Sequence record: NC_048674.1
Length of the DNA stretch: 64,000 bases
Reading direction: 5' to 3' (one strand)
Under the pieces are notes generated by a model. It was given only the letters and a program-made list of their open reading frames with translations. It ran no database searches and was not told where the DNA came from. Each line of letters starts with the position of its first letter. Within the stretch, counting starts at the first letter, position 1. This document shows positions 26,423 to 62,213 of the stretch, one piece after another. Position numbers and translations under genes: made by a program.

Positions 26423-27370
26423 ATGTCAGATATTATGCGTATCCGTTTCCCCAGTGAAGATCACCGGAGTCGATTTATAGCTCATAGCGTACACGCAAAC
26501 ACCCACATCGCCAAACATATGGGTATGGATTGGAATCGTGTATCATTCAATGGTCGTCGTTGGTCTCTGGTGGATGAGAACAATAAGGATGTGGTTATTG
26601 GTGGTATTGATGTTGCCACTACTATCCTTCCTTTGGAATATCAATTTTTCGAATGGGATATTCTCCCAGTAGAAAATAAACCTTCCATTAAATCTCTCTG
26701 GGATATTGCACAACAGAAGAAAGCAGAGTATGATGATGCTATGGTTGAATACAACAAAGCAGTAATGGAGAAACTTGATGAAAGTGCGATTTAAAAATAT
26801 CGAATCCAAGTTTGCGTTTACCACTGGTGGACGAGCTAATATGTCTATCGCCGAATACATGGGTAACGATTTCCATGAAGCCAAATCGTGCTTTGATGGA
26901 AGCATCGAACTCGTGGATAGCAAAGGGAATAATATTACTCTCAATACGTATGGTAAAGCAGTTCCAGACAATGGATGGAATGCTTGCTTCTTTGAAGATG
27001 AAACTCAATATTTGGAGATGCATTATGAAGATTAAGTTTAAAGACGAACAGTCCCGACACGAGTTCCGCCAATGCGATAATCTTAATAAAGATATCGAGT
27101 TTAAGATTGGTAATGAACCACATGAAGTAATCCAGAATGAACATGGTTGGTATCTCTCCAATGATGGATTAAAAATAATCATCAATGGGTTTTATGCTTT
27201 CATCAGTTCCCGCGAAATGAANGTATTTTGATATTGTTGAAGATGTTATCAATCCCATGGATANCATTGAAGCTCTATGGGNNCTATGGNANGATGTACA
27301 AGAAAAGAAAGCTGCTTTTGAACGTAGCTTGGAACTTTACCACGCTGAATATAATCGAATGTTCCGCTGA
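26423..27370 (+). CDS. Three tandem MKIRFK-family paralogs 9-11 (26423-26794, 26775-27035, 27025-27370 with an N-associated frameshift at ~27222)
   Basis: Starts MRIRFPSE, MKVRFKN and MKIKFKDE. Removing the N in atgaangtattttgat gives MKYFDIVE and opens the frame to ...QEKKAAFE...RMFR*. Confidence 0.75.
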
Positions 27371-27395
27371 ATCATCAAACGATCATGAGAGGGGT

Positions 27396-27426
27396 AAAAT
27401 GCACTTTTTTGGTGCATTTTCTTTTT
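27396..27426 (+). terminator. Intrinsic terminator ending the paralog cluster
   Basis: aaaatgcac/gtgcatttt stem followed by ctttttat. Confidence 0.7.
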
Positions 27427-27474
27427 ATACAACCATCAAAACATTTTCTCTCTATCCCTTGCTGTATAAGGGAT

Positions 27475-27548
27475 TCTGTTAATATTCTTTCACATATTTT
27501 CATAACTTTTCATATCTGTTAACATTCTTTCATATTTTGATAATGTTT
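27475..27548. repeat. Imperfect direct repeat in an AT-rich intergenic gap
   Basis: tctgttaatattctttcacatattttcataac vs tctgttaacattctttcatattttgataat. Confidence 0.65.
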
Positions 27549-27589
27549 GGTTCTTAAATTAAAAAGTTTGATTCTAGAACAAAAAAGTG

Positions 27590-27618
27590 TGGACACACAT
27601 TAGGTGATGTAGTACCAT
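27590..27618 (+). promoter_or_regulatory. Early promoter
   Basis: TGGACA - 17 nt - TACCAT. Confidence 0.55.
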
Positions 27619-28304
27619 GTTCTTACTGACTGATTGGAGATAGAATCTCCGTGGAGATAGATATGAAAAACATTCGTGAAATTGCTGCTGAAATGAAAAC
27701 TTTGTTGAACTCCCGTGGTTATGGTATTACTTCTGTATTTGGTATGTATCTTGATAACAATGCTATGATGGTTATCAAAGGCCGTGAGTTGGAAAAGGTA
27801 GCGCGTGACTTTGCGTTAGTTCGTGGTATTCATTCTATTGTGATTGCAGAAGAACTTTGCTATGATTCAGTTGACTTTGAAGATCCGACTAGTGAAGCTG
27901 AGTTGGTTCGTGTGTTGAAGTGCTGCATTGACTATGTGGAGTAAGATATGGAATGGGTTATTGGTGTTGTTGCTCTGGTGTGGTGTTTCTTGATGTTTGC
28001 TTATATCACTGAAAACAAGTTTAAGAACGAGCGGTATTCTATTCGTGATTGGTTGAAGTATCATGGATTTGGTGTTCATATTCATCGCAATGACTTTCTT
28101 CTTGATAGTTGTCAAATGGTTCGTCTTGGTGGTATATCTCAATGTAATAAATGTCTTTCTTGGGTTGTGTACTGGAAACTGTACAATATCCGCCGAAAGA
28201 AATTGAGTCGTGAAGATACTATTAAGAAACTGAATGCGTTGGTTAATGGTATGGTTGTTGAGCGGATTAAGCGTGAGAGTAAGAAAGATTTTTGGAAGGA
28301 TTAG

Positions 28305-28613
28305 ATGAAGAATCTCATTGCTTTATTGGCTGTGATTGGATTGATTGGTTGTGTTCCCAAAGTAGTTCATCAAGAAACTTATCGAGATACTGTTGTTGTT
28401 ACTGAGTTTGTGAAGAGGCATAAGCGACAGCGGATTAAGGTAATAACATCTGATGGTGTTTTGATTAATCAATATGTTGCTAAACGCTGTAGTGGGTGTT
28501 ATGCTTACAAGGGTGATAAGTTCTCAGTGACTGTTACCAAGAAAACTTGGAATGATGGTGATGTTACTTATAGTATCAACCGTTATGAGACTAAAGAATT
28601 TTTGAGGAAATGA
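28305..28613 (+). CDS. Lipoprotein, CxxC family member 1
   Basis: Lipobox LIGC, then TVVVTEF...CSGCY...GDK. Confidence 0.75.
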   Translation: MKNLIALLAVIGLIGCVPKVVHQETYRDTVVVTEFVKRHKRQRIKVITSDGVLINQYVAKRCSGCYAYKGDKFSVTVTKKTWNDGDVTYSINRYETKEFLRK

Positions 28614-29203
28614 TTATGACTGCTGCTGAATTGGTAAAGGCCGTTCGTGAGAAAGAACAAGCTCGTGTAGAACTTCGCAAGGCTATTGTGCAGGGGATTT
28701 ATGACGAGACGGTTGAATCCATGCTGAATCTAGATGAACTGGAAACAGACCTCAGTATCTATGGTATTGAGCGTATTTGTAATGTTGAACTTGATGGGGT
28801 TATGTTCTATGACCTTATCCGAGATGACATCATCCCGTTGTTTGTTAAGAATGGTTTCTCTGCTGTCTGGAATGAGGATGAAGGCGATAACCGTATTTTG
28901 ATTTGGGCACCTATTGGAGAATAATATGAAAGTTATTGACTATATCAAAAAGTATCCTAACGCTTATGCATGTGCTTGTGTTGAACGTTCGCACACTACT
29001 CCCAATTATGTTAACTATCTTAACCATTGTGCACTGGCTACCTTCATCAAGGCTGAGTCATGGGATAAGGTTGAGGAACTGATTAACAGCTCTGATTACT
29101 ATAAGCCTCTTGAGGGTGTTGTTCTTGCTGCTGCTGATTATATGGATGATGACAATGATGATCGCTGGAAAGCTTATGATGCATATCAATCAGGGGAAAT
29201 TGT

Positions 29204-29512
29204 ATGAGAGCATTAATTGTTGGTCTAACTTTGTTGTTGGTTGGGTGTGCACCGGTTGGGATTGTTAACACTTTTAGCNTTAAGGAATCAGTAACCGTTA
29301 TCAAATGGGATCCTGTCAATCGGTTTATTAGTTTTGTTTCTGATAGTGGATTGGTAGTGACTAACGTTTATATCTGGGGCGCATGTGAGGGGTGCTATTC
29401 TATCATTGGTGATAAGATGGATATTACTATCACCCAACAGGTGAAAAGCAACAATACAACCGAACTTGTTGTAGATTCAAACGAGGTTGGAAAACAGATG
29501 AGAAAGTTTTAA
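29204..29512 (+). CDS. Lipoprotein, CxxC family member 2
   Basis: Lipobox LVGC, then ESVTVIKW...CEGCY...GDK. Confidence 0.75.
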   Translation: MRALIVGLTLLLVGCAPVGIVNTFSXKESVTVIKWDPVNRFISFVSDSGLVVTNVYIWGACEGCYSIIGDKMDITITQQVKSNNTTELVVDSNEVGKQMRKF

Positions 29513-29745
29513 TGAAGAAAAAATATAGTCAGAAAGAGATAAACGCGCTACTTAAACTTGCGAAGGGTATCAAAGCTGGCGACCAGATTGAAGCAACTGA
29601 CAAGATGCTCTCTGACTTGGGTAAGATTTCTTTTCCATTGTTTCGTGAGCCTTGTACTGGCAAAATGTTTTTTGCTTGGAGAGGTTGTTCATATGTATTC
29701 AAAGACCGTATTAATGAGATGCTTGATTCGTTGAGGATGGAATAA

Positions 29746-30288
29746 AGTACTTGCATCGGTCTTTGGTTATGGTATTATGCCTACATCGAAGCGAAGGAGA
29801 CTATTATGAAAATCGAATGTGAATTCAAAGCCGTACCTAACAATACCAAGTTTTACGTTCTTCGTTATGTTGGTGCACCAGCCAGTGATTCTATTAGTTT
29901 CTTCAAGGGAGATTCTAATATTTGTTATGATGTGTACGGTGAGTGGAAAACCCCAGTCGATTTTGATAACACTCATCCATGTTGGTATTTTAAGGATTGA
30001 TATGAATGTAATTGTACGCGAAACAAATCATGGGAAGGATCTGATCTATTCTCATGATGATGGATTCACTCGCCACGTTGTTCAAATTTATGATGGTGGT
30101 TACGCTTGTTATCTTAATGAGAGTCGATGCTTTAAGAGAAAAACACACGAGTTGATGATGGCTCAATGTGGTATTGATCCAAAAGAGATTAATCCTTTAC
30201 CATGGAACTCTGATGCATATTATCGAAATTGTGTGATTTAGTACTTGCGTCGGTCTTTGGTTATGGTATTATATCTACATCGAAACGA
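29746..30288 (+). repeat. Pair of near-identical early promoter cassettes (29746-29794 and 30240-30288)
   Basis: agtacttgc(a/g)tcggtctttggttatggtattat(gc/at)ctacatcgaa(g/a)cga, 45/49 identical. Confidence 0.85.
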
Positions 30289-30311
30289 GATACCTAACTG
30301 AGGAAGAGATT

Positions 30312-30659
30312 ATGAAACACGTACTGATTGCTCTGGTTGCTTTGTTCGTTCTGGTTGGTTGCAAGAAAGAAGTTAGCGAAGTTTCTTTCGTTGATACTGT
30401 GACTGTTACCAAGTTCGTTAAGAAGCATTCCGATAGCCAGCGTGTGAGCGTTACCACTTCCGAAGGTATCGAGATGAACAACCACGTTGTTTCTCAGAAG
30501 GGTACAAACTGCCTTGGTTGCTATGCTAAAGCTGGTGATAAGCTGGAAGTCACTGTTAAGAAAACTACCTATGAGGATGGTTCTGTTCATTACTCTTTCA
30601 ATAAATCTGAAATGAAAACCGCTCTGAAACTGAACCGTCGTAACAACTATGCCAACTAA
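30312..30659 (+). CDS. Lipoprotein, CxxC family member 3
   Basis: Lipobox LVGC, then DTVTVTKF...CLGCY...GDK. Confidence 0.75.
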   Translation: MKHVLIALVALFVLVGCKKEVSEVSFVDTVTVTKFVKKHSDSQRVSVTTSEGIEMNNHVVSQKGTNCLGCYAKAGDKLEVTVKKTTYEDGSVHYSFNKSEMKTALKLNRRNNYAN

Positions 30660-31127
30660 GGAACGATAATGAAACTAATTGAACTGNATTGAGATTGTTA
30701 GTAGTGGACAGTCTGAGGTTTTGGTTGACCAATCGGGCTTTCATAATGTCTTAACCAANCTTGGTATTNATGATTNTGTGTTTGAGGACTTCATNNNAGC
30801 NGAAATTTGGGTAGAGAAAAACATTGTTCTTCATAAGGTGGATGGAGTTATCTATCTGTTCTATAAGGATTTGTATCTCGCTAAATGGAATTCCTATTGC
30901 AATCAATCTGGTTGTAATCTGTGTAACCGCGCTACACTTGAAAGTAAACAAAACCGTAACATTTCTAAGTTCATGTATGACCTGATGGAACTGTATATGG
31001 ACAAAGATGTTTATAAACAAAATCCATTCAAAAACTTGGAAATGAATGACGAAATTTAGTTGACGGGGTATCNCATTTATGGGATACTCTNTTTGTCGAT
31101 TGGGACATAACTATTGAGGAAGAAATC

Positions 31128-31982
31128 ATGACTATGAACAAATGGGAATCTCAAGGTGTTGGTAAGGCTCCGTTCCGTTGTGTTGGTATGTTCAAGATGC
31201 CTAACAAGGATACTGCAACTATGCAGGATTATGCGGCACTCCCTCAAGGTTATGGTGCTGGCTCCTGTCATGTGTGTGGTACTGGTATCATTTACAACTA
31301 CATGATCCACGATGCAGACGGCCAGAAATTCGTGGTTGGTTGTGAGTGTGTGAACTACACCAACGACACAACTCTGATTGATGCAGTCAAGGCCGAGCGT
31401 AAAGCTTTCAACAACGCACAGAAGGCCGCAGAAACTCGCAAACGCAACGAAGAGGAACGAGCGCGTAATGGTGGTCTAACTGATAAAGAAATGGCTCAGA
31501 AGGCCGTACAGGACGAATGGGACGCAAAGCGTAAAGTTTATCGTGAGACCAACAAAGAACTGTTCGATGCTGGGTTGGCTACTGGTTACGAATGGATTGA
31601 AGAGATCATCGAATCCTGTATCCATTACTGCTCTATGTCTGATGCACAAAAAACTGCAATTGAAAACGGTATTGCTGATTTCGAGTTCAAGAAAAATCAG
31701 TTGAATGAATTCTTCGGTGCTGTTGGTGATCGGGTGAAGAAAGTAGAACTCACCACCACTTTTGAGATGTGTGTTAAACAGGCTCAATATTACGGTGATT
31801 ATGATGTTTACCTCGCTGTGTTGATTGACTCGGAAGGTCGGACTTACAAATACATGGGTTCATCTTTGAAGTCCATCCCAACTAAGGGAAATACCGCCGT
31901 GATGTCATTCTCTATCAAGGCTCACGAAGAATATAAAGGGGTCAACCAGACTGTAATCCAGCGCCCCAAAATGCACGATTGA
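31128..31982 (+). CDS. Zn-finger + coiled coil + OB-fold-like protein
   Basis: CHVC...GCEC, then a charged helix, then C-terminal FGAVGDRV...D.EG..Y...K.HEEYKG..QT...RP. Confidence 0.65.
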   Translation: MTMNKWESQGVGKAPFRCVGMFKMPNKDTATMQDYAALPQGYGAGSCHVCGTGIIYNYMIHDADGQKFVVGCECVNYTNDTTLIDAVKAERKAFNNAQKAAETRKRNEEERARNGGLTDKEMAQKAVQDEWDAKRKVYRETNKELFDAGLATGYEWIEEIIESCIHYCSMSDAQKTAIENGIADFEFKKNQLNEFFGAVGDRVKKVELTTTFEMCVKQAQYYGDYDVYLAVLIDSEGRTYKYMGSSLKSIPTKGNTAVMSFSIKAHEEYKGVNQTVIQRPKMHD

Positions 31983-56980: not shown

Positions 56981-57358
56981 ATGGTAAGATACAAGGCAAT
57001 TATATTTGGGATTCTTCTTATTTTGGTTGGTGGGTCTACTTGGTATATGTTCAACAAGATCGAATCACAGGCAATAACAATCGGAGAGATGACCCAACAA
57101 CTAGAAACAATGACATCCAAATTATCCGCCATGGAATTGAGTATAAGCGATTTCAAACAACAGTCTAGCGAGTATAGTCAGACGGAAGAGAAATCGAATA
57201 GAGAGCTTTCTAAGCGCATTGGTACGCTGGAATCTAATGCTAGTCGCGGTAAGGATGCAATAGACAAGAAACCTAAGCTAGTAGAGAAGATAATCCAGAA
57301 GGATTATGAAGAGTTTGGAAGCAGAATGGATTGCCTTACTCTGGGGGAATGTAAATGA
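56981..57358 (+). CDS. Rz-like inner-membrane spanin (PseT.3-like)
   Basis: N-terminal TM helix, long coiled coil, overlap with the downstream lipoprotein. Confidence 0.8.
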   Translation: MVRYKAIIFGILLILVGGSTWYMFNKIESQAITIGEMTQQLETMTSKLSAMELSISDFKQQSSEYSQTEEKSNRELSKRIGTLESNASRGKDAIDKKPKLVEKIIQKDYEEFGSRMDCLTLGECK

Positions 57359-57654
57359 AAAAAATTCTAATTATGATGTGTATAGTGGTTCTTGCTGCAT
57401 GTTCAACACCACCGAGACCAGACCCGGTATTAGTGTTTCATCCAAATAGACCAACACCGGTCAAAACTTATATTCCGAAATGGACTGTTATTAAGGAAGG
57501 TGAAACAACATATGTCGGAATGACATATGAGGATAGTTTAAGATATAGGGCGTGGCTGGAAAAAATAGGTGTTTATATAGACTCACAAAATAGAATGTTA
57601 TGTTCTTATAGAAAGGATCTGAAAGAACCACAATGTCAAAAAGTCCCCAAATAA
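57355..57654 (+). CDS. Rz1-like outer-membrane spanin lipoprotein (PseT.2-like)
   Basis: Lipobox LAAC, Pro-rich stretch, VGMTYEDS...W...I..YI..Q..MLC.YR..L.E..C. Confidence 0.85.
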   Translation: MKKILIMMCIVVLAACSTPPRPDPVLVFHPNRPTPVKTYIPKWTVIKEGETTYVGMTYEDSLRYRAWLEKIGVYIDSQNRMLCSYRKDLKEPQCQKVPK

Positions 57655-57715: not shown

Positions 57716-60700
57716 ATGGCAGACCTTAAGAGTTCGTCTACCGCTGGGGGTGGATTAGTTTGGACACAGACTAACCTACCATTTTCCCCGCAAGACGTTA
57801 AGCTGTTTTATAATGGTAATGAGGTTATTGATAGTGTTAGTAATCAATCTATTGGTGGGGCTAAAACCTTTACCGGAACATTGACATATAAAACTCCTGT
57901 CAATTCTAATGAAGTTGCCATTAAAGGTTATGTTGATAACCTAGATAGTACATCGGTGAAATCTGTAACCGGGACTCTCCCAATCGTCGTTACTACTGGT
58001 GTAAGTCCGCGAGTTTCAATTAATAACGCAACGCAATCCGCTCATGGGGCAATGAGCAAAGAAGATAAGACAAAGCTAGACGGTTTACCTGTTCGAGCTG
58101 TTAATAGAGATGGCGATACTATGACTGGAAACCTAATGGTTAATGGTCAGGTTGAGGCGAATAGAATCAAATCCAACGGTCAAGTTGAAGTTTATGATTC
58201 TGCTACCAATACATACGCACAGCGTATGGTTGCATCTGGTTCATTACTTTATTTCCAAGGTGGTAAAGTAGATAGAGACGTTACTGACCAACGAGTTGCT
58301 TTTAGTGGTTGGTATGGTACACCTCTCACTCAAGTAAGATTTAATATGGCTACTGGGGTTAATCCCCAAGTGTCTTATGGAAATACAAACTATGATATTT
58401 TCCATAAAGGTAATTTGCCTAGCGCGGAAGAAGTAAAGGCAATGGCTGTATATGATCGTCCACCGGAAGATGATTGCGATAAAGCAATTATGCCCGGTAA
58501 CTATGGTGTTTTCGCAAACACAAAAAATACTCCTAACGACGGTGGTACTGGTCCTAGTGGATCAACTCTCCTTGTTACCCGTTGGGGTAACGGGGCGAAT
58601 GCACAAATATTCTTTTCTTATACACAAGATCGTGTATGGGTTCGTCGTCAATATATCGGTGTTTGGCAGCCATGGGCGGAAATGTATACCTCTCTGAACA
58701 AACAGTCTGTGGGTGGTATGGGTCTTGGTGTTGGTGATAGTCCCAACGCGATCACAGTAACCGGTGGTGTTCGTGACTTCAACCTAATTAAGACCAACGG
58801 TGTTTTTACAGTTGATGGTAACTGGGCTAATGGAACTGACAATACCGCAACTGCAACTACTCATACGGGTATTGTTGAGGTTAAACAACGATCTTTCGAT
58901 AACTTGACTGTTCAGAAATTCAGTAACTGGGTAACAGTCGGTGGATTTGTAGAACCAAGAGAGTTTACAAGGGTATGGATTAATGCAGTTGAAGGTTGGC
59001 AACCATGGTTACCGACTGGTGTGTGGGAACAGGTAAACACATACAGAACTGGTATTCTAAGACACAATAACTCTACTAATGACGACTCTGTTTATCCTTA
59101 CGTATCTTATACCAAGGAAAAATATCGTGATGGTGTTGCTGCTGGTATTCCATACACAATAGGTGAGGTTAGTTTTAGAGTTGGTGCTACAAACCGATAT
59201 GATCCCCATAGTGGCGATCAGTTGTCTAGAATTATAGGTCAAGCAACAAACACAAACACAACCGGTGAATATGAAGGTACTTTGTTCTTAGCTTCTAGAT
59301 ATCGCAAAGGGTCTGATGGTTCGACTGCTGACACTAGTACACTAAGAATAAGTAGAGATGTTGGTGCTGAATTTACCCATGCAGGTAAGAAAGTACAGAT
59401 CGAAACCGGTAATGTGAATGCAGAGAAATTTATTGTAACCACAACTGGTTATGCACTTCAATATTCCGGTAATGCAAACCAAGGAATCTATTTAGATAAT
59501 AGAACAATTATTGGTGGTGGTTCATCTGGTGTTGTGATTCGTCCAAATGGTTCGGGAACTGTAACTGGGGAAACTGTCTTTAATGCAAACGGTACTATAT
59601 CAAATAACCAAGTTCCGACGTTGGCAATGCATTTAACAAACAAGGCATATGTTGATGGTGTTGCTCTTGGTGGTTTTAGTTCTATTATCACACTGAGAGA
59701 TACAGATAACCTCAACGATATTAAAACCGCTGGTATATATAGCCAAGTTGCTAACGCTAAAGCATTAACTAGTTTGAACTATCCAGTTGAGAAAGCTGGT
59801 AACCTTATTGTTACTACTTCCGCTGGCGTTATTCAAAAATATTGGGTATATAACTCGTCCGAAGTTTGGTCTAGAGCACAATATTCAAGTGGTGCGTGGA
59901 AGCCTTGGTATCGTGACTATAACGAAGAGTTTAAACCTACTTCCGCTGATGTTGGGGCGTTGTCTTTAACTGGTGGTACTGTAACTGGGGATGTTAGATT
60001 TAACTCTGGCAACACCACTAGATTGACTCTTGGTAGTGGTTCTGATTATTACGTCGAACGCTCACCATCTGGATTGACATTAGCTTCTGGAACTATCAAT
60101 CCGAAGGTTAAAGTTAATAACACAGATTATGACATATATCATACCGGCAATAAACCATCAGCCGCCGACGTTGGTACATTAACAACTACACAGATAAACA
60201 CAGAGCTTAACAAAAAGCTTAATCTGTCTGGTGGTATCATGACTGGCGCAATTCGTTGGGATGCAACAGATGAATATATCAACGCCGCGAGCAACAATAT
60301 ATATCTGGCTGCTAAGACTGGTACTGTATATCTTGAAAGCAAAAATAACCCAATGGTAAGGATTGGAAGTAACGATTACACCATATATCACACTGGTAAT
60401 AAACCTTCTGCTGGTGATTTTAATGCATACACAAAAACTGAAACAGATAATTTACTTAATACTAAATTAAATCTGTCTGGTGGCACTCTAACTGGAGCGG
60501 TAACTACTGCAACCATAAAGAATGCTGTTATGATTAACAATGGTGCATCGATTAGTTTCCAAGACGGAGCTAATGCTAGATTCCATATACTGACAGAAGG
60601 TAACACCTTTAAACTAAAACATGGAGACAATGCCGATAATCAGCTACTATACGTTAGCCCCACAGTAATGGAATTACAAACACAATTAAGTGCAAGAACT

Positions 60701-61666
60701 GCAATGTTTGTGAGTGGAGCTGATGGAACTCGGGTGTTTGGGATTGGTGCTCAAGAATCCAACGGAATAAACCCATACGTGTATGTACGAAGATCTGGTG
60801 ATACTGGAAACATACGTGTTCTGACATTTGATCAGGGTGAGATTATTGCTAACCAAGATCGAATCGCTGCTCCAACTTTCCGAGTTATTAACAACGCAGG
60901 ATTACAGTTCTCCCCAAATAGTAACCGGAGTGGTGTGACTTGGGGGATGGGTATGGATCTATCTAATGGTAACCTTGGTATCCATCGTTATCAAGATGGT
61001 GTATGGAATCTCCAACCATTTATGATAGGTTCGAACGGTGTGGTTACTATGAGTACGGGTTTCAACACAACCAGCGGAACAATGTCTGGTTCCCTAAGTG
61101 TTAATGGAAACATTGAGGTTGGTGGATCTGTAGGTGTTAATAGTGGTTATGCCTCTATCATTAGCAATAATAATAACAGACTAGAATTTCATCGTCCCGG
61201 ATTTTGGGCAACAATGATTTACATGAACACAGACGGTCAACTTCGATTTACATCAAGTAATGGTGCCGGTGGTGAAACTAAACTCAGAATGTCTATTGAT
61301 AACAATGGTAATACCGGAATAGCAGGTTCTGTTAACGCTAATGGTGGTGTTCACGACGTAGGTCAACGAGTTTATTCACCAAGTAACCCAATTCCAGATG
61401 GTGTAATACTGAGATCAGTCGTCAATGGCGGCGGCAATATGGATATTGGTTCATATGCGATGGTCACAGTCAAATCCAACCTTGGTCCACAAGGTCCGGG
61501 GACTGTTCTCCAAGGTACTCAGATTGCATTCTCGAACGCGGAAGGTACTAATATGGTTGCCTGTAACTATGGTACATGGCGTCTGATGGGTGTTTCTAGA
61601 GCAAATTCCCAAAACGGCGACGGTTGGGGTTCTTGGAACGTAACATTGGCACAGCGGATAACTTAA
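57716..61666 (+). CDS. 36: Long tail fibre distal subunit (gp36-type N-terminus, several knob domains)
   Basis: MADLKSSSTAGGGLVWTQTNLP resembles T4 gp36 MADLKVGSTTGGSVIWHQGNFP. It has three knob-like W..W domains, YH.GNKPSA and LNLSGG..TG repeats, and a C-terminal GTWRLMG...TLAQRIT. Confidence 0.8.
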   Translation: MADLKSSSTAGGGLVWTQTNLPFSPQDVKLFYNGNEVIDSVSNQSIGGAKTFTGTLTYKTPVNSNEVAIKGYVDNLDSTSVKSVTGTLPIVVTTGVSPRVSINNATQSAHGAMSKEDKTKLDGLPVRAVNRDGDTMTGNLMVNGQVEANRIKSNGQVEVYDSATNTYAQRMVASGSLLYFQGGKVDRDVTDQRVAFSGWYGTPLTQVRFNMATGVNPQVSYGNTNYDIFHKGNLPSAEEVKAMAVYDRPPEDDCDKAIMPGNYGVFANTKNTPNDGGTGPSGSTLLVTRWGNGANAQIFFSYTQDRVWVRRQYIGVWQPWAEMYTSLNKQSVGGMGLGVGDSPNAITVTGGVRDFNLIKTNGVFTVDGNWANGTDNTATATTHTGIVEVKQRSFDNLTVQKFSNWVTVGGFVEPREFTRVWINAVEGWQPWLPTGVWEQVNTYRTGILRHNNSTNDDSVYPYVSYTKEKYRDGVAAGIPYTIGEVSFRVGATNRYDPHSGDQLSRIIGQATNTNTTGEYEGTLFLASRYRKGSDGSTADTSTLRISRDVGAEFTHAGKKVQIETGNVNAEKFIVTTTGYALQYSGNANQGIYLDNRTIIGGGSSGVVIRPNGSGTVTGETVFNANGTISNNQVPTLAMHLTNKAYVDGVALGGFSSIITLRDTDNLNDIKTAGIYSQVANAKALTSLNYPVEKAGNLIVTTSAGVIQKYWVYNSSEVWSRAQYSSGAWKPWYRDYNEEFKPTSADVGALSLTGGTVTGDVRFNSGNTTRLTLGSGSDYYVERSPSGLTLASGTINPKVKVNNTDYDIYHTGNKPSAADVGTLTTTQINTELNKKLNLSGGIMTGAIRWDATDEYINAASNNIYLAAKTGTVYLESKNNPMVRIGSNDYTIYHTGNKPSAGDFNAYTKTETDNLLNTKLNLSGGTLTGAVTTATIKNAVMINNGASISFQDGANARFHILTEGNTFKLKHGDNADNQLLYVSPTVMELQTQLSARTAMFVSGADGTRVFGIGAQESNGINPYVYVRRSGDTGNIRVLTFDQGEIIANQDRIAAPTFRVINNAGLQFSPNSNRSGVTWGMGMDLSNGNLGIHRYQDGVWNLQPFMIGSNGVVTMSTGFNTTSGTMSGSLSVNGNIEVGGSVGVNSGYASIISNNNNRLEFHRPGFWATMIYMNTDGQLRFTSSNGAGGETKLRMSIDNNGNTGIAGSVNANGGVHDVGQRVYSPSNPIPDGVILRSVVNGGGNMDIGSYAMVTVKSNLGPQGPGTVLQGTQIAFSNAEGTNMVACNYGTWRLMGVSRANSQNGDGWGSWNVTLAQRIT

Positions 61667-61712: not shown

Positions 61713-62213
61713 ATGTTAGAAAAAATGCTTAAATTCGACGAGGGTTCGAAGCTTACTGTTTATTGGGATACCGAAGGATATCCGACTATCGGTATTGGTC
61801 ATTTAATAAAGAAACTTCGTACGAAAGATATGGGGGAAATTAACCGTGAGTTAAGTTCCCATGTTGGGAGGGTTATTACCGACGGTAAGATTACTCAATC
61901 AGAAGAAAGTCAACTTTTTGCTAAAGATCTTGAAGTAGTTAGAAATTCTATGAAAGGGTATGTCGATTTATGGTCTACATATGTTGGATTAGATGAAGTC
62001 AGAAAAACCGCATTGGAAAATATGGTTTTTCAGATGGGGGCCAAAGGTGTAAATGGCTTCCCGTCGATGCTTCGCGCTATGCGCTCCAAGAACTGGGTAG
62101 AAGCAAAGAAGCACGGTCTTGCTAGTGCTTGGGCGAGACAGACACCAAATCGTGCTAAGAGAGTTACAGACGTTATTGAGACTGGTACTTACAAAGGTTA
62201 TCCATTCGCATAA
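61713..62213 (+). CDS. e: T4-type lysozyme (endolysin)
   Basis: DEG...YWDTEGYPTIGIGHL (E/D/T triad), NMVFQMG, WARQTPNRAKRV. Confidence 0.95.
   Translation: MLEKMLKFDEGSKLTVYWDTEGYPTIGIGHLIKKLRTKDMGEINRELSSHVGRVITDGKITQSEESQLFAKDLEVVRNSMKGYVDLWSTYVGLDEVRKTALENMVFQMGAKGVNGFPSMLRAMRSKNWVEAKKHGLASAWARQTPNRAKRVTDVIETGTYKGYPFA

What the first reader, a model, noticed from the sequence alone, without database searches (positions are those of the whole stretch)
28305..30659. Three paralogous early lipoproteins with a CxxCY..GDK motif
Seen: 28305, 29204 and 30312 each have a lipobox (L[IV]GC), a beta-rich body (TV.V..F/W, V.SD/EG) and C.GCY...GDK. They are interspersed with other ORFs, and the last lies behind one of two duplicated promoter cassettes. 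Known: early phage lipoproteins such as T5 Llp and Cor block outer-membrane receptors. Inference: a diversified set of receptor-blocking or superinfection-exclusion proteins, or periplasmic redox- or metal-binding factors.
Basis: partly seen in the sequence, partly recalled or inferred. Interest (0 to 1): 0.65.

Follow-up and report, generated by a model that had tools for sequence, protein, structure and literature searches.

The report
Three paralogous early phage lipoproteins
A T4-like Aeromonas phage carries three diverged copies of a small lipid-anchored beta-barrel protein, found only in this phage group; it probably acts at the host outer membrane soon after infection, perhaps to block further phage attack, but its function is untested.

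Summary
The window is the first 64 kb of Aeromonas phage AS-sw, a T4-like phage (Straboviridae, Ceceduovirus). ORFs A (28305-28613), B (29204-29512) and C (30312-30659) are true paralogs. All three match phrog_9091 (unknown function) over their full length. Each has a canonical lipobox, a C-x-G-C-Y motif and G-D-K. C lies behind the second of two 92%-identical promoter-like cassettes.

AlphaFold models of C and B (pLDDT about 85) give the same fold: a five-stranded OB-like barrel that starts 2-5 residues after the lipid-anchored Cys, then a C-terminal helix. The CxGC motif sits in the loop between strands 3 and 4.

The family is tiny: 9 hits among 1.84 billion representatives, and every hit with known context lies in Aeromonas T4-like phages or phage-like metagenome contigs. 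It splits into four old ortholog groups, with 2-3 copies per genome. One group has no Cys pair, which argues against a redox or metal site as the core function.

There is no sequence or fold link to Llp, Cor or spanins, and the real spanin pair lies at 56981-57654.

Best reading: early outer-membrane lipoproteins that bind host envelope proteins, most likely for superinfection exclusion. That function rests on analogy only. This is a structurally new variant of a known kind, of moderate interest.

The parts
28305..28613 (+). Lipoprotein paralog A (102 aa). Lipobox LIGC, Cys16, +2 Val. CSGC at residues 62-65 (nt 28488-28499). Mature part 87 aa, pI 9.7.
   Evidence: ORF; phrog_9091 E 2.3e-48; alignment; lipobox and pI. 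Orthologs occur in CC2, AS-zj, AS-szw, 65, avDM6 and Aswh_1. dN/dS about 0.1-0.35.
29204..29512 (+). Lipoprotein paralog B (102 aa), the most divergent. Lipobox LVGC, Cys15, +2 Ala. CEGC at residues 61-64 (nt 29384-29395). Mature part acidic (pI 5.2). One masked base gives X26.
   Evidence: ORF; phrog_9091 E 9.3e-39. AF2 model of the AS-zj ortholog: pLDDT 84.5, same strand order as C. Present in 9 Ceceduovirus phages; absent from CC2, Assk, Aswh_1 and ZPAH1.
30312..30659 (+). Lipoprotein paralog C (115 aa). Lipobox LVGC, Cys17, +2 Lys. CLGC at residues 67-70 (nt 30510-30521). Mature part 99 aa, pI 9.2.
   Evidence: ORF; phrog_9091 E 1.3e-45. AF2 model: pLDDT 85, pTM 0.72, strands 20-36, 43-48, 54-61, 77-87, 92-96, helix 98-113. 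96-100% identical in 14 listed records of related phages.
29746..29794 (+). Promoter-like cassette, copy 1: TTGCAT, 16 nt, TGG-TATTAT (extended -10). It precedes the two-gene module 29806-30241.
   Evidence: Direct repeat family D2; exact 16-mer found only at these two sites in the window; alignment with CC2 and AS-szw. Promoter function is inferred from the sequence only.
30240..30288 (+). Promoter-like cassette, copy 2, 92% identical to copy 1. It lies 24 nt upstream of the start codon of C.
   Evidence: AS-szw has one hybrid cassette (left flank of copy 1, right flank of copy 2) and lacks the 494-bp module between them.
27590..27618 (+). Weak sigma70-like site (TGGACA, 17 nt, TACCAT) in the 280-nt gap before the gene string that holds A and B. 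It is a possible start of that transcription unit. A terminator-like hairpin at 27396-27420 closes the previous unit.
   Evidence: Consensus scan only. The number of such sites in the region is not above the shuffled expectation, so this part is tentative.

Best explanation
A, B and C are three anciently diverged members of one phage-specific family of small lipoproteins.

Proposed pathway (inferred):
- They are made from sigma70-type, early-style promoters and exported by Sec.
- They are lipidated at the invariant lipobox Cys.

Structure (modelled): a compact five-stranded OB-like beta-barrel with a C-terminal helix is held within a few residues of the lipid anchor. It can therefore only reach the periplasmic face of outer-membrane components.

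Sequence pattern: the conserved residues are structural (turn Gly/Asp, core Val). Surfaces and charge differ between paralogs, so each paralog probably binds a different host envelope protein.

The CxGC pair most likely forms a DsbA-made disulfide that staples the long loop between strands 3 and 4. One ortholog group has aromatic residues in its place.

Most likely consequence, by analogy with T5 Llp, Cor and Rtp45: inactivation of phage receptors or entry routes, that is, superinfection exclusion and protection of progeny from debris.

Shown: paralogy, lipobox, fold model, distribution, purifying selection.
Inferred: lipidation, outer-membrane location, disulfide, timing, target and function.
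For: Paralogy and family.

Lipobox:
- In the 10-sequence family alignment the only invariant columns are K2 and the lipobox G-C.
- All 18 compiled members have a canonical lipobox with Cys at 15-18, K/R in the n-region, an uncharged h-region and no Asp at +2.

Fold:
- Two independent AF2 models (C and the B ortholog), pLDDT 85 and 84.5, share the same topology. The first strand starts at residue 20, 2-5 residues after the Cys.
- OB-like barrels (S1/cold-shock domains) are the top VIA matches for both models, Z 5.0-5.6.

Real genes: dN/dS 0.1-0.4 between orthologs.

Ancient paralogs: four ortholog groups spread over Ceceduovirus and Ishigurovirus, 2-3 copies per genome.

Phage-only, narrow family:
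- 9 hits in 1.84e9 representatives.
- Only Aeromonas T4-like phages in the phage collection.
- Metagenomic members sit in phage-like strings of small ORFs.

Timing:
- Sigma70-like cassette with an extended -10 directly upstream of C.
- The only TATAAATA late-promoter match on the + strand of the 64-kb window is at 761.

Precedent: small early outer-membrane lipoproteins that bind the periplasmic face of FhuA or LptD and exclude superinfection (PMC9586334, PMC12685063).

Diversification: mature pI is 9.2-9.8 for A and C types and 5.2-7.9 for the B type.
Against: - No experiment, and no homology to any exclusion protein. Cor matches have E 0.012-0.46 and lie mostly in the signal peptide; there are no Llp or Rtp45 matches.
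- Known exclusion lipoproteins are about 6 kDa and are usually encoded next to the receptor-binding-protein gene. These are 9-11 kDa and lie about 27 kb from the tail-fibre gene at 57716-61666.
- B alleles and the tail-fibre C-terminal alleles do not co-vary strictly among close relatives. AS-szw shares B with AS-sw but not the fibre tip; AS-zj shares the fibre tip but has only about 87% identical B.
- The host receptor of these phages is unknown.
- The Asp+2 sorting rule is an E. coli rule and is untested in Aeromonas.
- No RNA data were found.
Confidence: 0.4

Rival explanations
1. They are outer-membrane or periplasmic host-takeover factors with a role other than exclusion. Examples: inhibitors of a host periplasmic or outer-membrane enzyme (lytic transglycosylase, protease, secretin, Bam/Lpt component), or envelope stabilisers that help the cell last until programmed lysis.
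For: The same anatomy supports this as well as the main reading: lipobox, short tether, OB-like binding module, early-style promoter. The genes lie among host-takeover-type orphan genes, far from tail-fibre genes. There is no strict co-variation with the fibre tip.
Against: No similarity to known lipoprotein inhibitors, and no hit in Pfam, NCBIfam or PADLOC. Nothing points to a specific target.
Confidence: 0.3
2. They are periplasmic redox or metal-binding factors that work through the CxGC motif: a thiol-disulfide exchanger, a sensor, or a Zn/Cu site formed across a dimer.
For: CxGC is invariant in A, B and C and in most relatives. It sits in an exposed loop. From memory only, not tested: the E. 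coli lipoprotein NlpE carries a CXXC in its N-terminal domain.
Against: - The D ortholog group (65, avDM6, Aswh_1) has no Cys other than the lipid Cys, with N-W-Y-Y in place of C-x-G-C.
- P0009 keeps only the first Cys, plus a C-terminal one.
- Only two candidate ligands per chain, and no conserved His or Met.
- The fold is an OB-like barrel, not thioredoxin-like, and the motif is not at a helix N-terminus.
Confidence: 0.08
3. They are lysis proteins, that is, o-spanins (Rz1-like outer-membrane lipoproteins).
For: They are small lipoproteins. There are weak PHROG spanin hits for C, E 0.1-0.22, partly over the signal peptide.
Against: - The genome has its own overlapping spanin pair at 56981-57358 (phrog_739, E 9e-33) and 57355-57654 (phrog_812, E 7e-34).
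- A, B and C have no i-spanin partner, no proline-rich extended region and a globular fold.
- There are three copies, in a non-late region.
Confidence: 0.02
4. The lipobox is not used. The proteins are ordinary secreted or membrane-tethered proteins, or are not expressed.
For: No direct evidence of lipidation or expression. No RNA run holds the locus.
Against: The lipobox G-C is the only invariant feature besides K2 across the family down to 27% identity. All 18 members fit the lipoprotein signal rule. Purifying selection is seen, and Shine-Dalgarno-like sequences (AGGA, GGGGA, GAGGAAGAG) precede each start codon.
Confidence: 0.05

Closest known systems
T5 Llp (superinfection-exclusion lipoprotein that binds the periplasmic face of FhuA; PMC9586334)
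   Same: Small phage lipoprotein of a lytic phage. Made early, anchored in the inner leaflet of the outer membrane, with a short tether, so it acts on outer-membrane proteins from the periplasmic side.
   Different: - No sequence or fold similarity found.
- About 9-11 kDa with an OB-like barrel, against about 6-7 kDa for Llp.
- Not next to the receptor-binding-protein gene.
- Three paralogs instead of one.
- Target and effect unknown.
Cor (phi80/N15/HK022 exclusion lipoprotein; phrog_1119)
   Same: Phage lipoprotein. There are weak PHROG matches.
   Different: The matches have E 0.012-0.46. For A and B they cover only the signal peptide (residues 1-21 and 1-18); for C the stretch is 1-49. Not a member.
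Rtp45 (exclusion lipoprotein of phage Rtp that binds LptDE at the periplasmic outer-membrane interface; PMC12685063)
   Same: Shows that small periplasm-facing phage lipoproteins can inactivate receptors that are not TonB-dependent. This is the mechanism proposed here.
   Different: Rtp45 is about 6 kDa, from siphophages, and encoded in the receptor-binding-protein module. No similarity was detected.
Rz1-type o-spanins (phrog_812 and others)
   Same: Phage outer-membrane lipoproteins of about 100 aa.
   Different: The phage has a separate bona fide spanin pair. A-C are globular, lack a partner gene and lie in a non-late region.
OB-fold domains of the S1/cold-shock type
   Same: Five-stranded barrel topology. 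These are the top structural matches for both models, Z 5.0-5.6, 62-77 residues aligned at 2.6-3.5 A.
   Different: Z is below the level that indicates kinship. The usual helix between strands 3 and 4 is replaced by a Cys-stapled loop, and an extra C-terminal helix is present. The setting is periplasmic and lipid-anchored, so nucleic-acid binding is not expected.
PeSL promoter-terminator shuffling cassettes of T4-type phages (PMC2839356, PMC4122927)
   Same: The duplicated promoter-like cassette flanks a gene module that is present or absent between close relatives, with a hybrid junction. Its hexamers fit the TTGYVH ... TAWWAT form reported for the nt-1/KVP40 pair.
   Different: The spacer is 16 nt here, not the N17 of that consensus. 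No stem-loop part was examined here. Only this one pair was studied.

Membership tests
Bacterial lipoprotein precursors (signal peptidase II substrates) | N-terminal K/R, uncharged hydrophobic stretch, lipobox [LVI][ASTVI][GAS]C with Cys at about residues 15-35 | tested here: met
   All three, and all 18 compiled family members, fit. The lipobox G-C is invariant in the family alignment.
Bacterial lipoprotein precursors (signal peptidase II substrates) | Actual diacylglyceryl modification and cleavage by LspA | not testable with these tools
   Needs globomycin treatment or lipid labelling.
phrog_9091 (uncharacterised phage protein family) | Full-length HMM match | tested here: met
   E 2.3e-48, 9.3e-39 and 1.3e-45, covering residues 1-102/108 of each protein.
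Cor superinfection exclusion protein (phrog_1119) | Significant match over the mature domain | tested here: not met
   E 0.2, 0.46 and 0.012. Matched stretches are residues 1-21, 1-18 and 1-49, so mostly signal peptide.
T5 Llp / Rtp45-type exclusion lipoproteins | Sequence or structural similarity to Llp or Rtp45 | tested here: not met
   No such family in the PHROG, Pfam or NCBIfam scans. No such chain in the PDB sequence profile search, in Foldseek PDB or in the top 50 of VIA-wide for two models.
T5 Llp / Rtp45-type exclusion lipoproteins | Gene adjacent to the receptor-binding-protein gene | tested here: not met
   The neighbours are orphan small ORFs. The tail-fibre gene lies at 57716-61666.
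T5 Llp / Rtp45-type exclusion lipoproteins | Binds the phage's own outer-membrane receptor and blocks adsorption | not testable with these tools
   The receptor of these phages is unknown. No complex prediction was attempted.
Rz1-like o-spanin | Paired or overlapping i-spanin gene, spanin family match, late expression | tested here: not met
   Only noise-level spanin hits, E 0.1-0.22. The true spanin pair is at 56981-57654. The only + strand TATAAATA in the window is at 761.
Thioredoxin-like CxxC oxidoreductases | Thioredoxin fold with CxxC at a helix N-terminus; motif conserved in the family | tested here: not met
   The models show an OB-like barrel with CxGC in a loop. The motif is absent in the D ortholog group and changed in P0009.
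OB fold | Five-stranded closed barrel with 1-2-3-5-4-1 topology | tested here: inconclusive
   The best structural matches are S1/cold-shock OB domains, but only at Z 5.0-5.6. Model coordinates could not be inspected for barrel closure.

The most novel reading that the evidence does not exclude
The family is a structurally new class of phage exclusion or receptor-modulating factors. These would be OB-like outer-membrane lipoproteins of T4-like phages, whose paralogs (A, B, C/D) each neutralise a different host outer-membrane protein from the periplasmic side. One phage would then have a multi-receptor shield against homologous and heterologous phages.
Probability: 0.3. Interest if true: 0.6.

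Novelty: new variant of a known kind. Interest (0 to 1): 0.4.

Why it matters
The lipoprotein exclusion factors considered here (T5 Llp, Cor, Rtp45) come from siphophages and temperate phages. From memory, not checked here, the known T4 exclusion proteins (Imm, Sp) are not lipoproteins.

If these OB-like lipoproteins do modulate host outer-membrane proteins, three things follow:
- They would be a new structural solution to that task.
- They would point to the still unknown receptors or envelope targets of Aeromonas salmonicida/hydrophila phages that are being developed for aquaculture therapy.
- They could explain interference between phages in cocktails.

If they do something else at the envelope, they are still a compact, well-folding and experimentally tractable entry into the orphan early genes of T4-like phages.

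Tried and rejected
- Homology: Pfam, NCBIfam and PADLOC scans gave nothing above threshold.
- The word-based protein search found only 3 near-identical proteins. The IMG/VR pattern scan found only AS-zj-like and CC2 contigs.
- The PDB sequence profile search gave only a chance S1-domain hit, E 0.79. Foldseek against the PDB gave nothing at E <= 0.001.
- The ESM Atlas gave unnamed clusters at 0.89-0.90. Named ones (NigD_N OB domain, DUF5818, DUF3221) scored only 0.81, which is a lead, not evidence.
- P0010 and P0011 (2199 and 591 aa, multi-stretch hits at E about 1e-4) were taken as repeat-driven chance matches.
- Expression data: no RNA run holds the locus.
- Spanin reading: rejected.
- Coupling of A to the upstream membrane protein (27948-28304, phrog_18339): not pursued, because CC2 has another ORF inserted between them, and the basic residues after its N-terminal hydrophobic segment suggest, by my reading of the positive-inside rule, that its bulk is cytoplasmic.
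- Co-variation of B with the tail-fibre C-terminus. Presence and absence agree: 9 B-positive phages keep this fibre end, while CC2, Assk, Aswh_1 and ZPAH1 lack B and lack or only partly match it. This is confounded by phylogeny (one or two events), and allele-level concordance fails for AS-zj and AS-szw. Inconclusive.
- Complex prediction was not used. No partner has a prior good enough to justify a job, and the Aeromonas receptor is unknown.
Full report
**Identity of the window.** The region 27600-31200 matches Aeromonas phage AS-sw (MF498775.1 / NC_048674.1) at the same coordinates with 99.7% identity. The difference is due to masked bases. The phage is a 230-kb T4-like myovirus (Straboviridae, Emmerichvirinae, Ceceduovirus) of A. 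salmonicida. All genes in the region are annotated 'hypothetical protein'. The papers on AS-sw and on the relative P19 do not mention lipoproteins, and they leave the receptor open.

**The observation.** ORFs A (28305-28613, 102 aa), B (29204-29512, 102 aa) and C (30312-30659, 115 aa) are on the + strand. Each is preceded by a Shine-Dalgarno-like sequence.
- They are homologous. BLASTP gives A-C 48% identity (E 2e-29), A-B 29% (E 2e-12) and C-B 23% (E 7e-8).
- All three match phrog_9091 ('unknown function') end to end, with E 1e-39 to 2e-48.
- The invariant columns among the three include the lipobox L-x-G-C, C-x-G-C-Y and G-D-K.
- The genes are separated by orphan ORFs from seven different PHROGs of unknown function.
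- The two promoter-like cassettes (29746-29794 and 30240-30288, 92% identical) are real. The second ends 24 nt before the start codon of C. Read directly, each carries TTGCAT, 16 nt, then TGG-TATTAT (an extended -10).
- A six-frame lipobox scan of the whole 230-kb genome returns only A, B, C and the o-spanin as plausible lipoproteins. The concentration of three in 2.4 kb is therefore a property of this family, not a chance pattern.

**Anatomy of the protein.** AlphaFold2 models were built for C (pLDDT 85, pTM 0.72) and for the AS-zj ortholog of B (pLDDT 84.5, pTM 0.70).
- Both give the same architecture: a disordered signal peptide, then five strands, then a C-terminal helix. In C these are strands 20-36, 43-48, 54-61, 77-87 and 92-96 and helix 98-113.
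- The first strand begins 2-5 residues after the lipid-anchored Cys, so the domain is tethered very closely to the membrane.
- The CxGC motif lies in the 14-15-residue loop between strands 3 and 4.
- Foldseek finds nothing significant in the PDB.
- The exhaustive VIA search puts S1/cold-shock OB domains on top for both models, at Z 5.0-5.6 with 62-77 residues aligned at 2.6-3.5 A. That level supports an OB-like arrangement but neither kinship nor function.
- In the viral model library the significant matches are the phage 65.2 and AS-sw paralogs and a few other small phage lipoproteins, for example from Pseudomonas phage VCM. This hints at a wider, sequence-divergent class that I did not follow up.

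**Distribution and evolution.**
- A profile search of 1.84 billion representative proteins found only 9 hits at E <= 1e-3. Seven are family members and two are long repetitive proteins that I treat as chance.
- tblastn against 50,697 phage records finds the family only in Aeromonas T4-like phages of Ceceduovirus and Ishigurovirus.
- Metagenomic members lie in phage-like strings of small same-strand ORFs: a 101-kb contig that also carries RtcB and Thg1, and a 32-kb contig.
- Whole-record searches give 3 copies in AS-sw, AS-zj and Aswh_1, and 2 copies in CC2, 65 and avDM6.
- A maximum-likelihood tree resolves four ortholog groups. A occurs in both genera. C occurs in Ceceduovirus and Aswh_1. D is sister to C and occurs in 65, avDM6 and Aswh_1. 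B is long-branched and restricted to part of Ceceduovirus. The duplications therefore predate the split of the two genera.
- Orthologs evolve under purifying selection, with dN/dS 0.1-0.4.
- In the 10-sequence family alignment the only invariant columns are K2 and the lipobox G-C. All 18 compiled members have a canonical lipoprotein signal, and none has Asp at +2.
- The D group has no cysteine other than the lipid Cys; N-W-Y-Y replaces C-x-G-C. One metagenomic member keeps only the first Cys, plus a C-terminal Cys.

**What this means for the CxGC motif.** The pair is dispensable in one whole ortholog group and can be replaced by aromatic residues. It sits in a loop of a non-thioredoxin fold and has no further conserved ligands. 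It is therefore best read as a structural disulfide staple made in the oxidising periplasm, not as the active site of the family. This is an inference. The redox state and metal content were not testable here.

**Mechanism.** The solid part is that these are phage-specific lipoprotein precursors with a compact binding-type domain held against a membrane. I infer outer-membrane localisation from the absence of the Asp+2 retention signal, which is an E. coli rule. I infer early timing from three things:
- the sigma70-like cassette upstream of C;
- the gene neighbourhood of small orphan ORFs;
- the fact that the only T4-type late promoter motif (TATAAATA) on the + strand of the window is at 761.

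The short tether restricts possible partners to the periplasmic face of outer-membrane proteins or lipoproteins. That is exactly where T5 Llp binds FhuA and Rtp45 binds LptDE to cause exclusion. The paralogs differ in surface and charge: mature pI is 9.2-9.8 for A and C types against 5.2-7.9 for the B type. The conserved positions are core and turn residues, which fits different targets for different paralogs. I therefore rank 'envelope-directed binders, most likely superinfection exclusion or receptor inactivation' first, at about 0.4. A non-exclusion envelope role comes second, at about 0.3.

**Arguments against the exclusion reading.**
- There is no homology or fold match to Llp, Cor or Rtp45.
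- The proteins are larger than the known exclusion lipoproteins.
- They are not adjacent to a receptor-binding-protein gene.
- Co-variation between B alleles and the C-terminal part of the 1316-aa tail-fibre protein is imperfect.

**Rejected readings.** The spanin reading fails. The phage has an overlapping Rz/Rz1-type pair at 56981-57358 and 57355-57654 (phrog_739 and phrog_812, E about 1e-33), just upstream of the tail-fibre gene.

**The promoter cassettes.** AS-szw has A, B and C but lacks the two genes between the cassettes. Its single cassette has the left flank of copy 1 and the right flank of copy 2, which is the signature of recombination between the repeats. The lower coverage in G2, P19 and AsSzw2 is consistent with the same pattern but was not examined. 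CC2 keeps both copies. This matches the published PeSL concept of promoter-bearing repeats that mediate modular shuffling in T4-type hyperplastic regions (PMC2839356; PMC4122927). It shows that C and its promoter behave as a portable module. In CC2 the place of B is taken by an unrelated 94-aa ORF, and an extra ORF is inserted upstream of A.

**Novelty and verdict.** The family is already catalogued as an uncharacterised PHROG, and public model libraries auto-label it 'lipoprotein'. I found no description of its fold, paralog structure or function. It is not a member of any known exclusion or lysis lipoprotein family. If it works as proposed, it is a structurally new variant of a known kind of phage device. 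Interest is moderate (0.4): the finding is real, clean and testable, but the function rests on analogy.

Noticed in passing
window 29746-30288; L021 3625-3714 (AS-szw): The two 49-nt promoter-like repeats flank a 494-bp two-gene module (29806-30241). AS-szw lacks this module, and the lower coverage in G2, P19 and AsSzw2 suggests the same. AS-szw carries a single hybrid cassette, which indicates recombination between the repeats (PeSL-like modular shuffling).
   Followed up: yes
window 56981-57358 and 57355-57654: Overlapping Rz/Rz1-type spanin pair (phrog_739 E 9e-33; phrog_812 E 7e-34). The o-spanin has lipobox LAAC and a proline-rich start. It lies directly upstream of a 1316-aa tail-fibre gene (57716-61666) and a T4 e-like lysozyme ORF (61713-62213).
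   Followed up: partly
L006 2680-3000 and 3891-4175 (phage CC2): In CC2 an unrelated 94-aa ORF without a signal peptide occupies the place of paralog B. An extra 106-aa ORF with a hydrophobic segment is inserted between the membrane protein and paralog A. These are gene-sized replacements inside an otherwise collinear block.
   Followed up: partly
window 27948-28304: 118-aa protein (phrog_18339) with an N-terminal hydrophobic segment and a C-x-x-C motif. Its stop codon abuts the start codon of paralog A. It is conserved in CC2 and AS-szw. Function unknown.
   Followed up: no
window 27372-27650: 280-nt intergenic gap holding a terminator-like hairpin plus T-run (27396-27420) and a 24-nt direct repeat, 88% identical, 40 nt apart (27475-27498 and 27515-27538). 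Possibly a regulatory region for the gene string that contains A and B.
   Followed up: no
window 31128-31982; L009 3049-3873 (65p230); L008 3057-3911: A 284-aa protein (phrog_2319, unknown function) lies one gene downstream of C in AS-sw. In phages 65 and avDM6 a gene of like size (825 and 855 nt) lies immediately upstream of the Cys-less D-type paralog. Homology of those genes to the AS-sw protein was not tested.
   Followed up: no
window 60000-61666 compared with B (29204-29512) across relatives: The tail-fibre C-terminal alleles and the B alleles are mosaic among close relatives. AS-zj shares the fibre end (99.9%) but has an about 87% identical B. AS-szw has an identical B but an 89% identical, partly unaligned fibre end.
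   Followed up: partly
window 27222-27292, 29279, 30687-30802, 31073-31092: Scattered ambiguous bases (n) in the served sequence, 689 over the whole 230-kb record as served. One of them makes residue 26 of paralog B unreadable; the otherwise identical AS-szw copy has Val there.
   Followed up: partly
BFVD hits of model medea38cea1f8: Small lipoproteins or orphans of other large myoviruses (Pseudomonas phages VCM and pf16, Aeromonas phage Aeh1, Vibrio phage nt-1, Klebsiella phage Eowyn) appear as weaker structural neighbours. An OB-like lipoprotein class may be wider than the sequence family.
   Followed up: no
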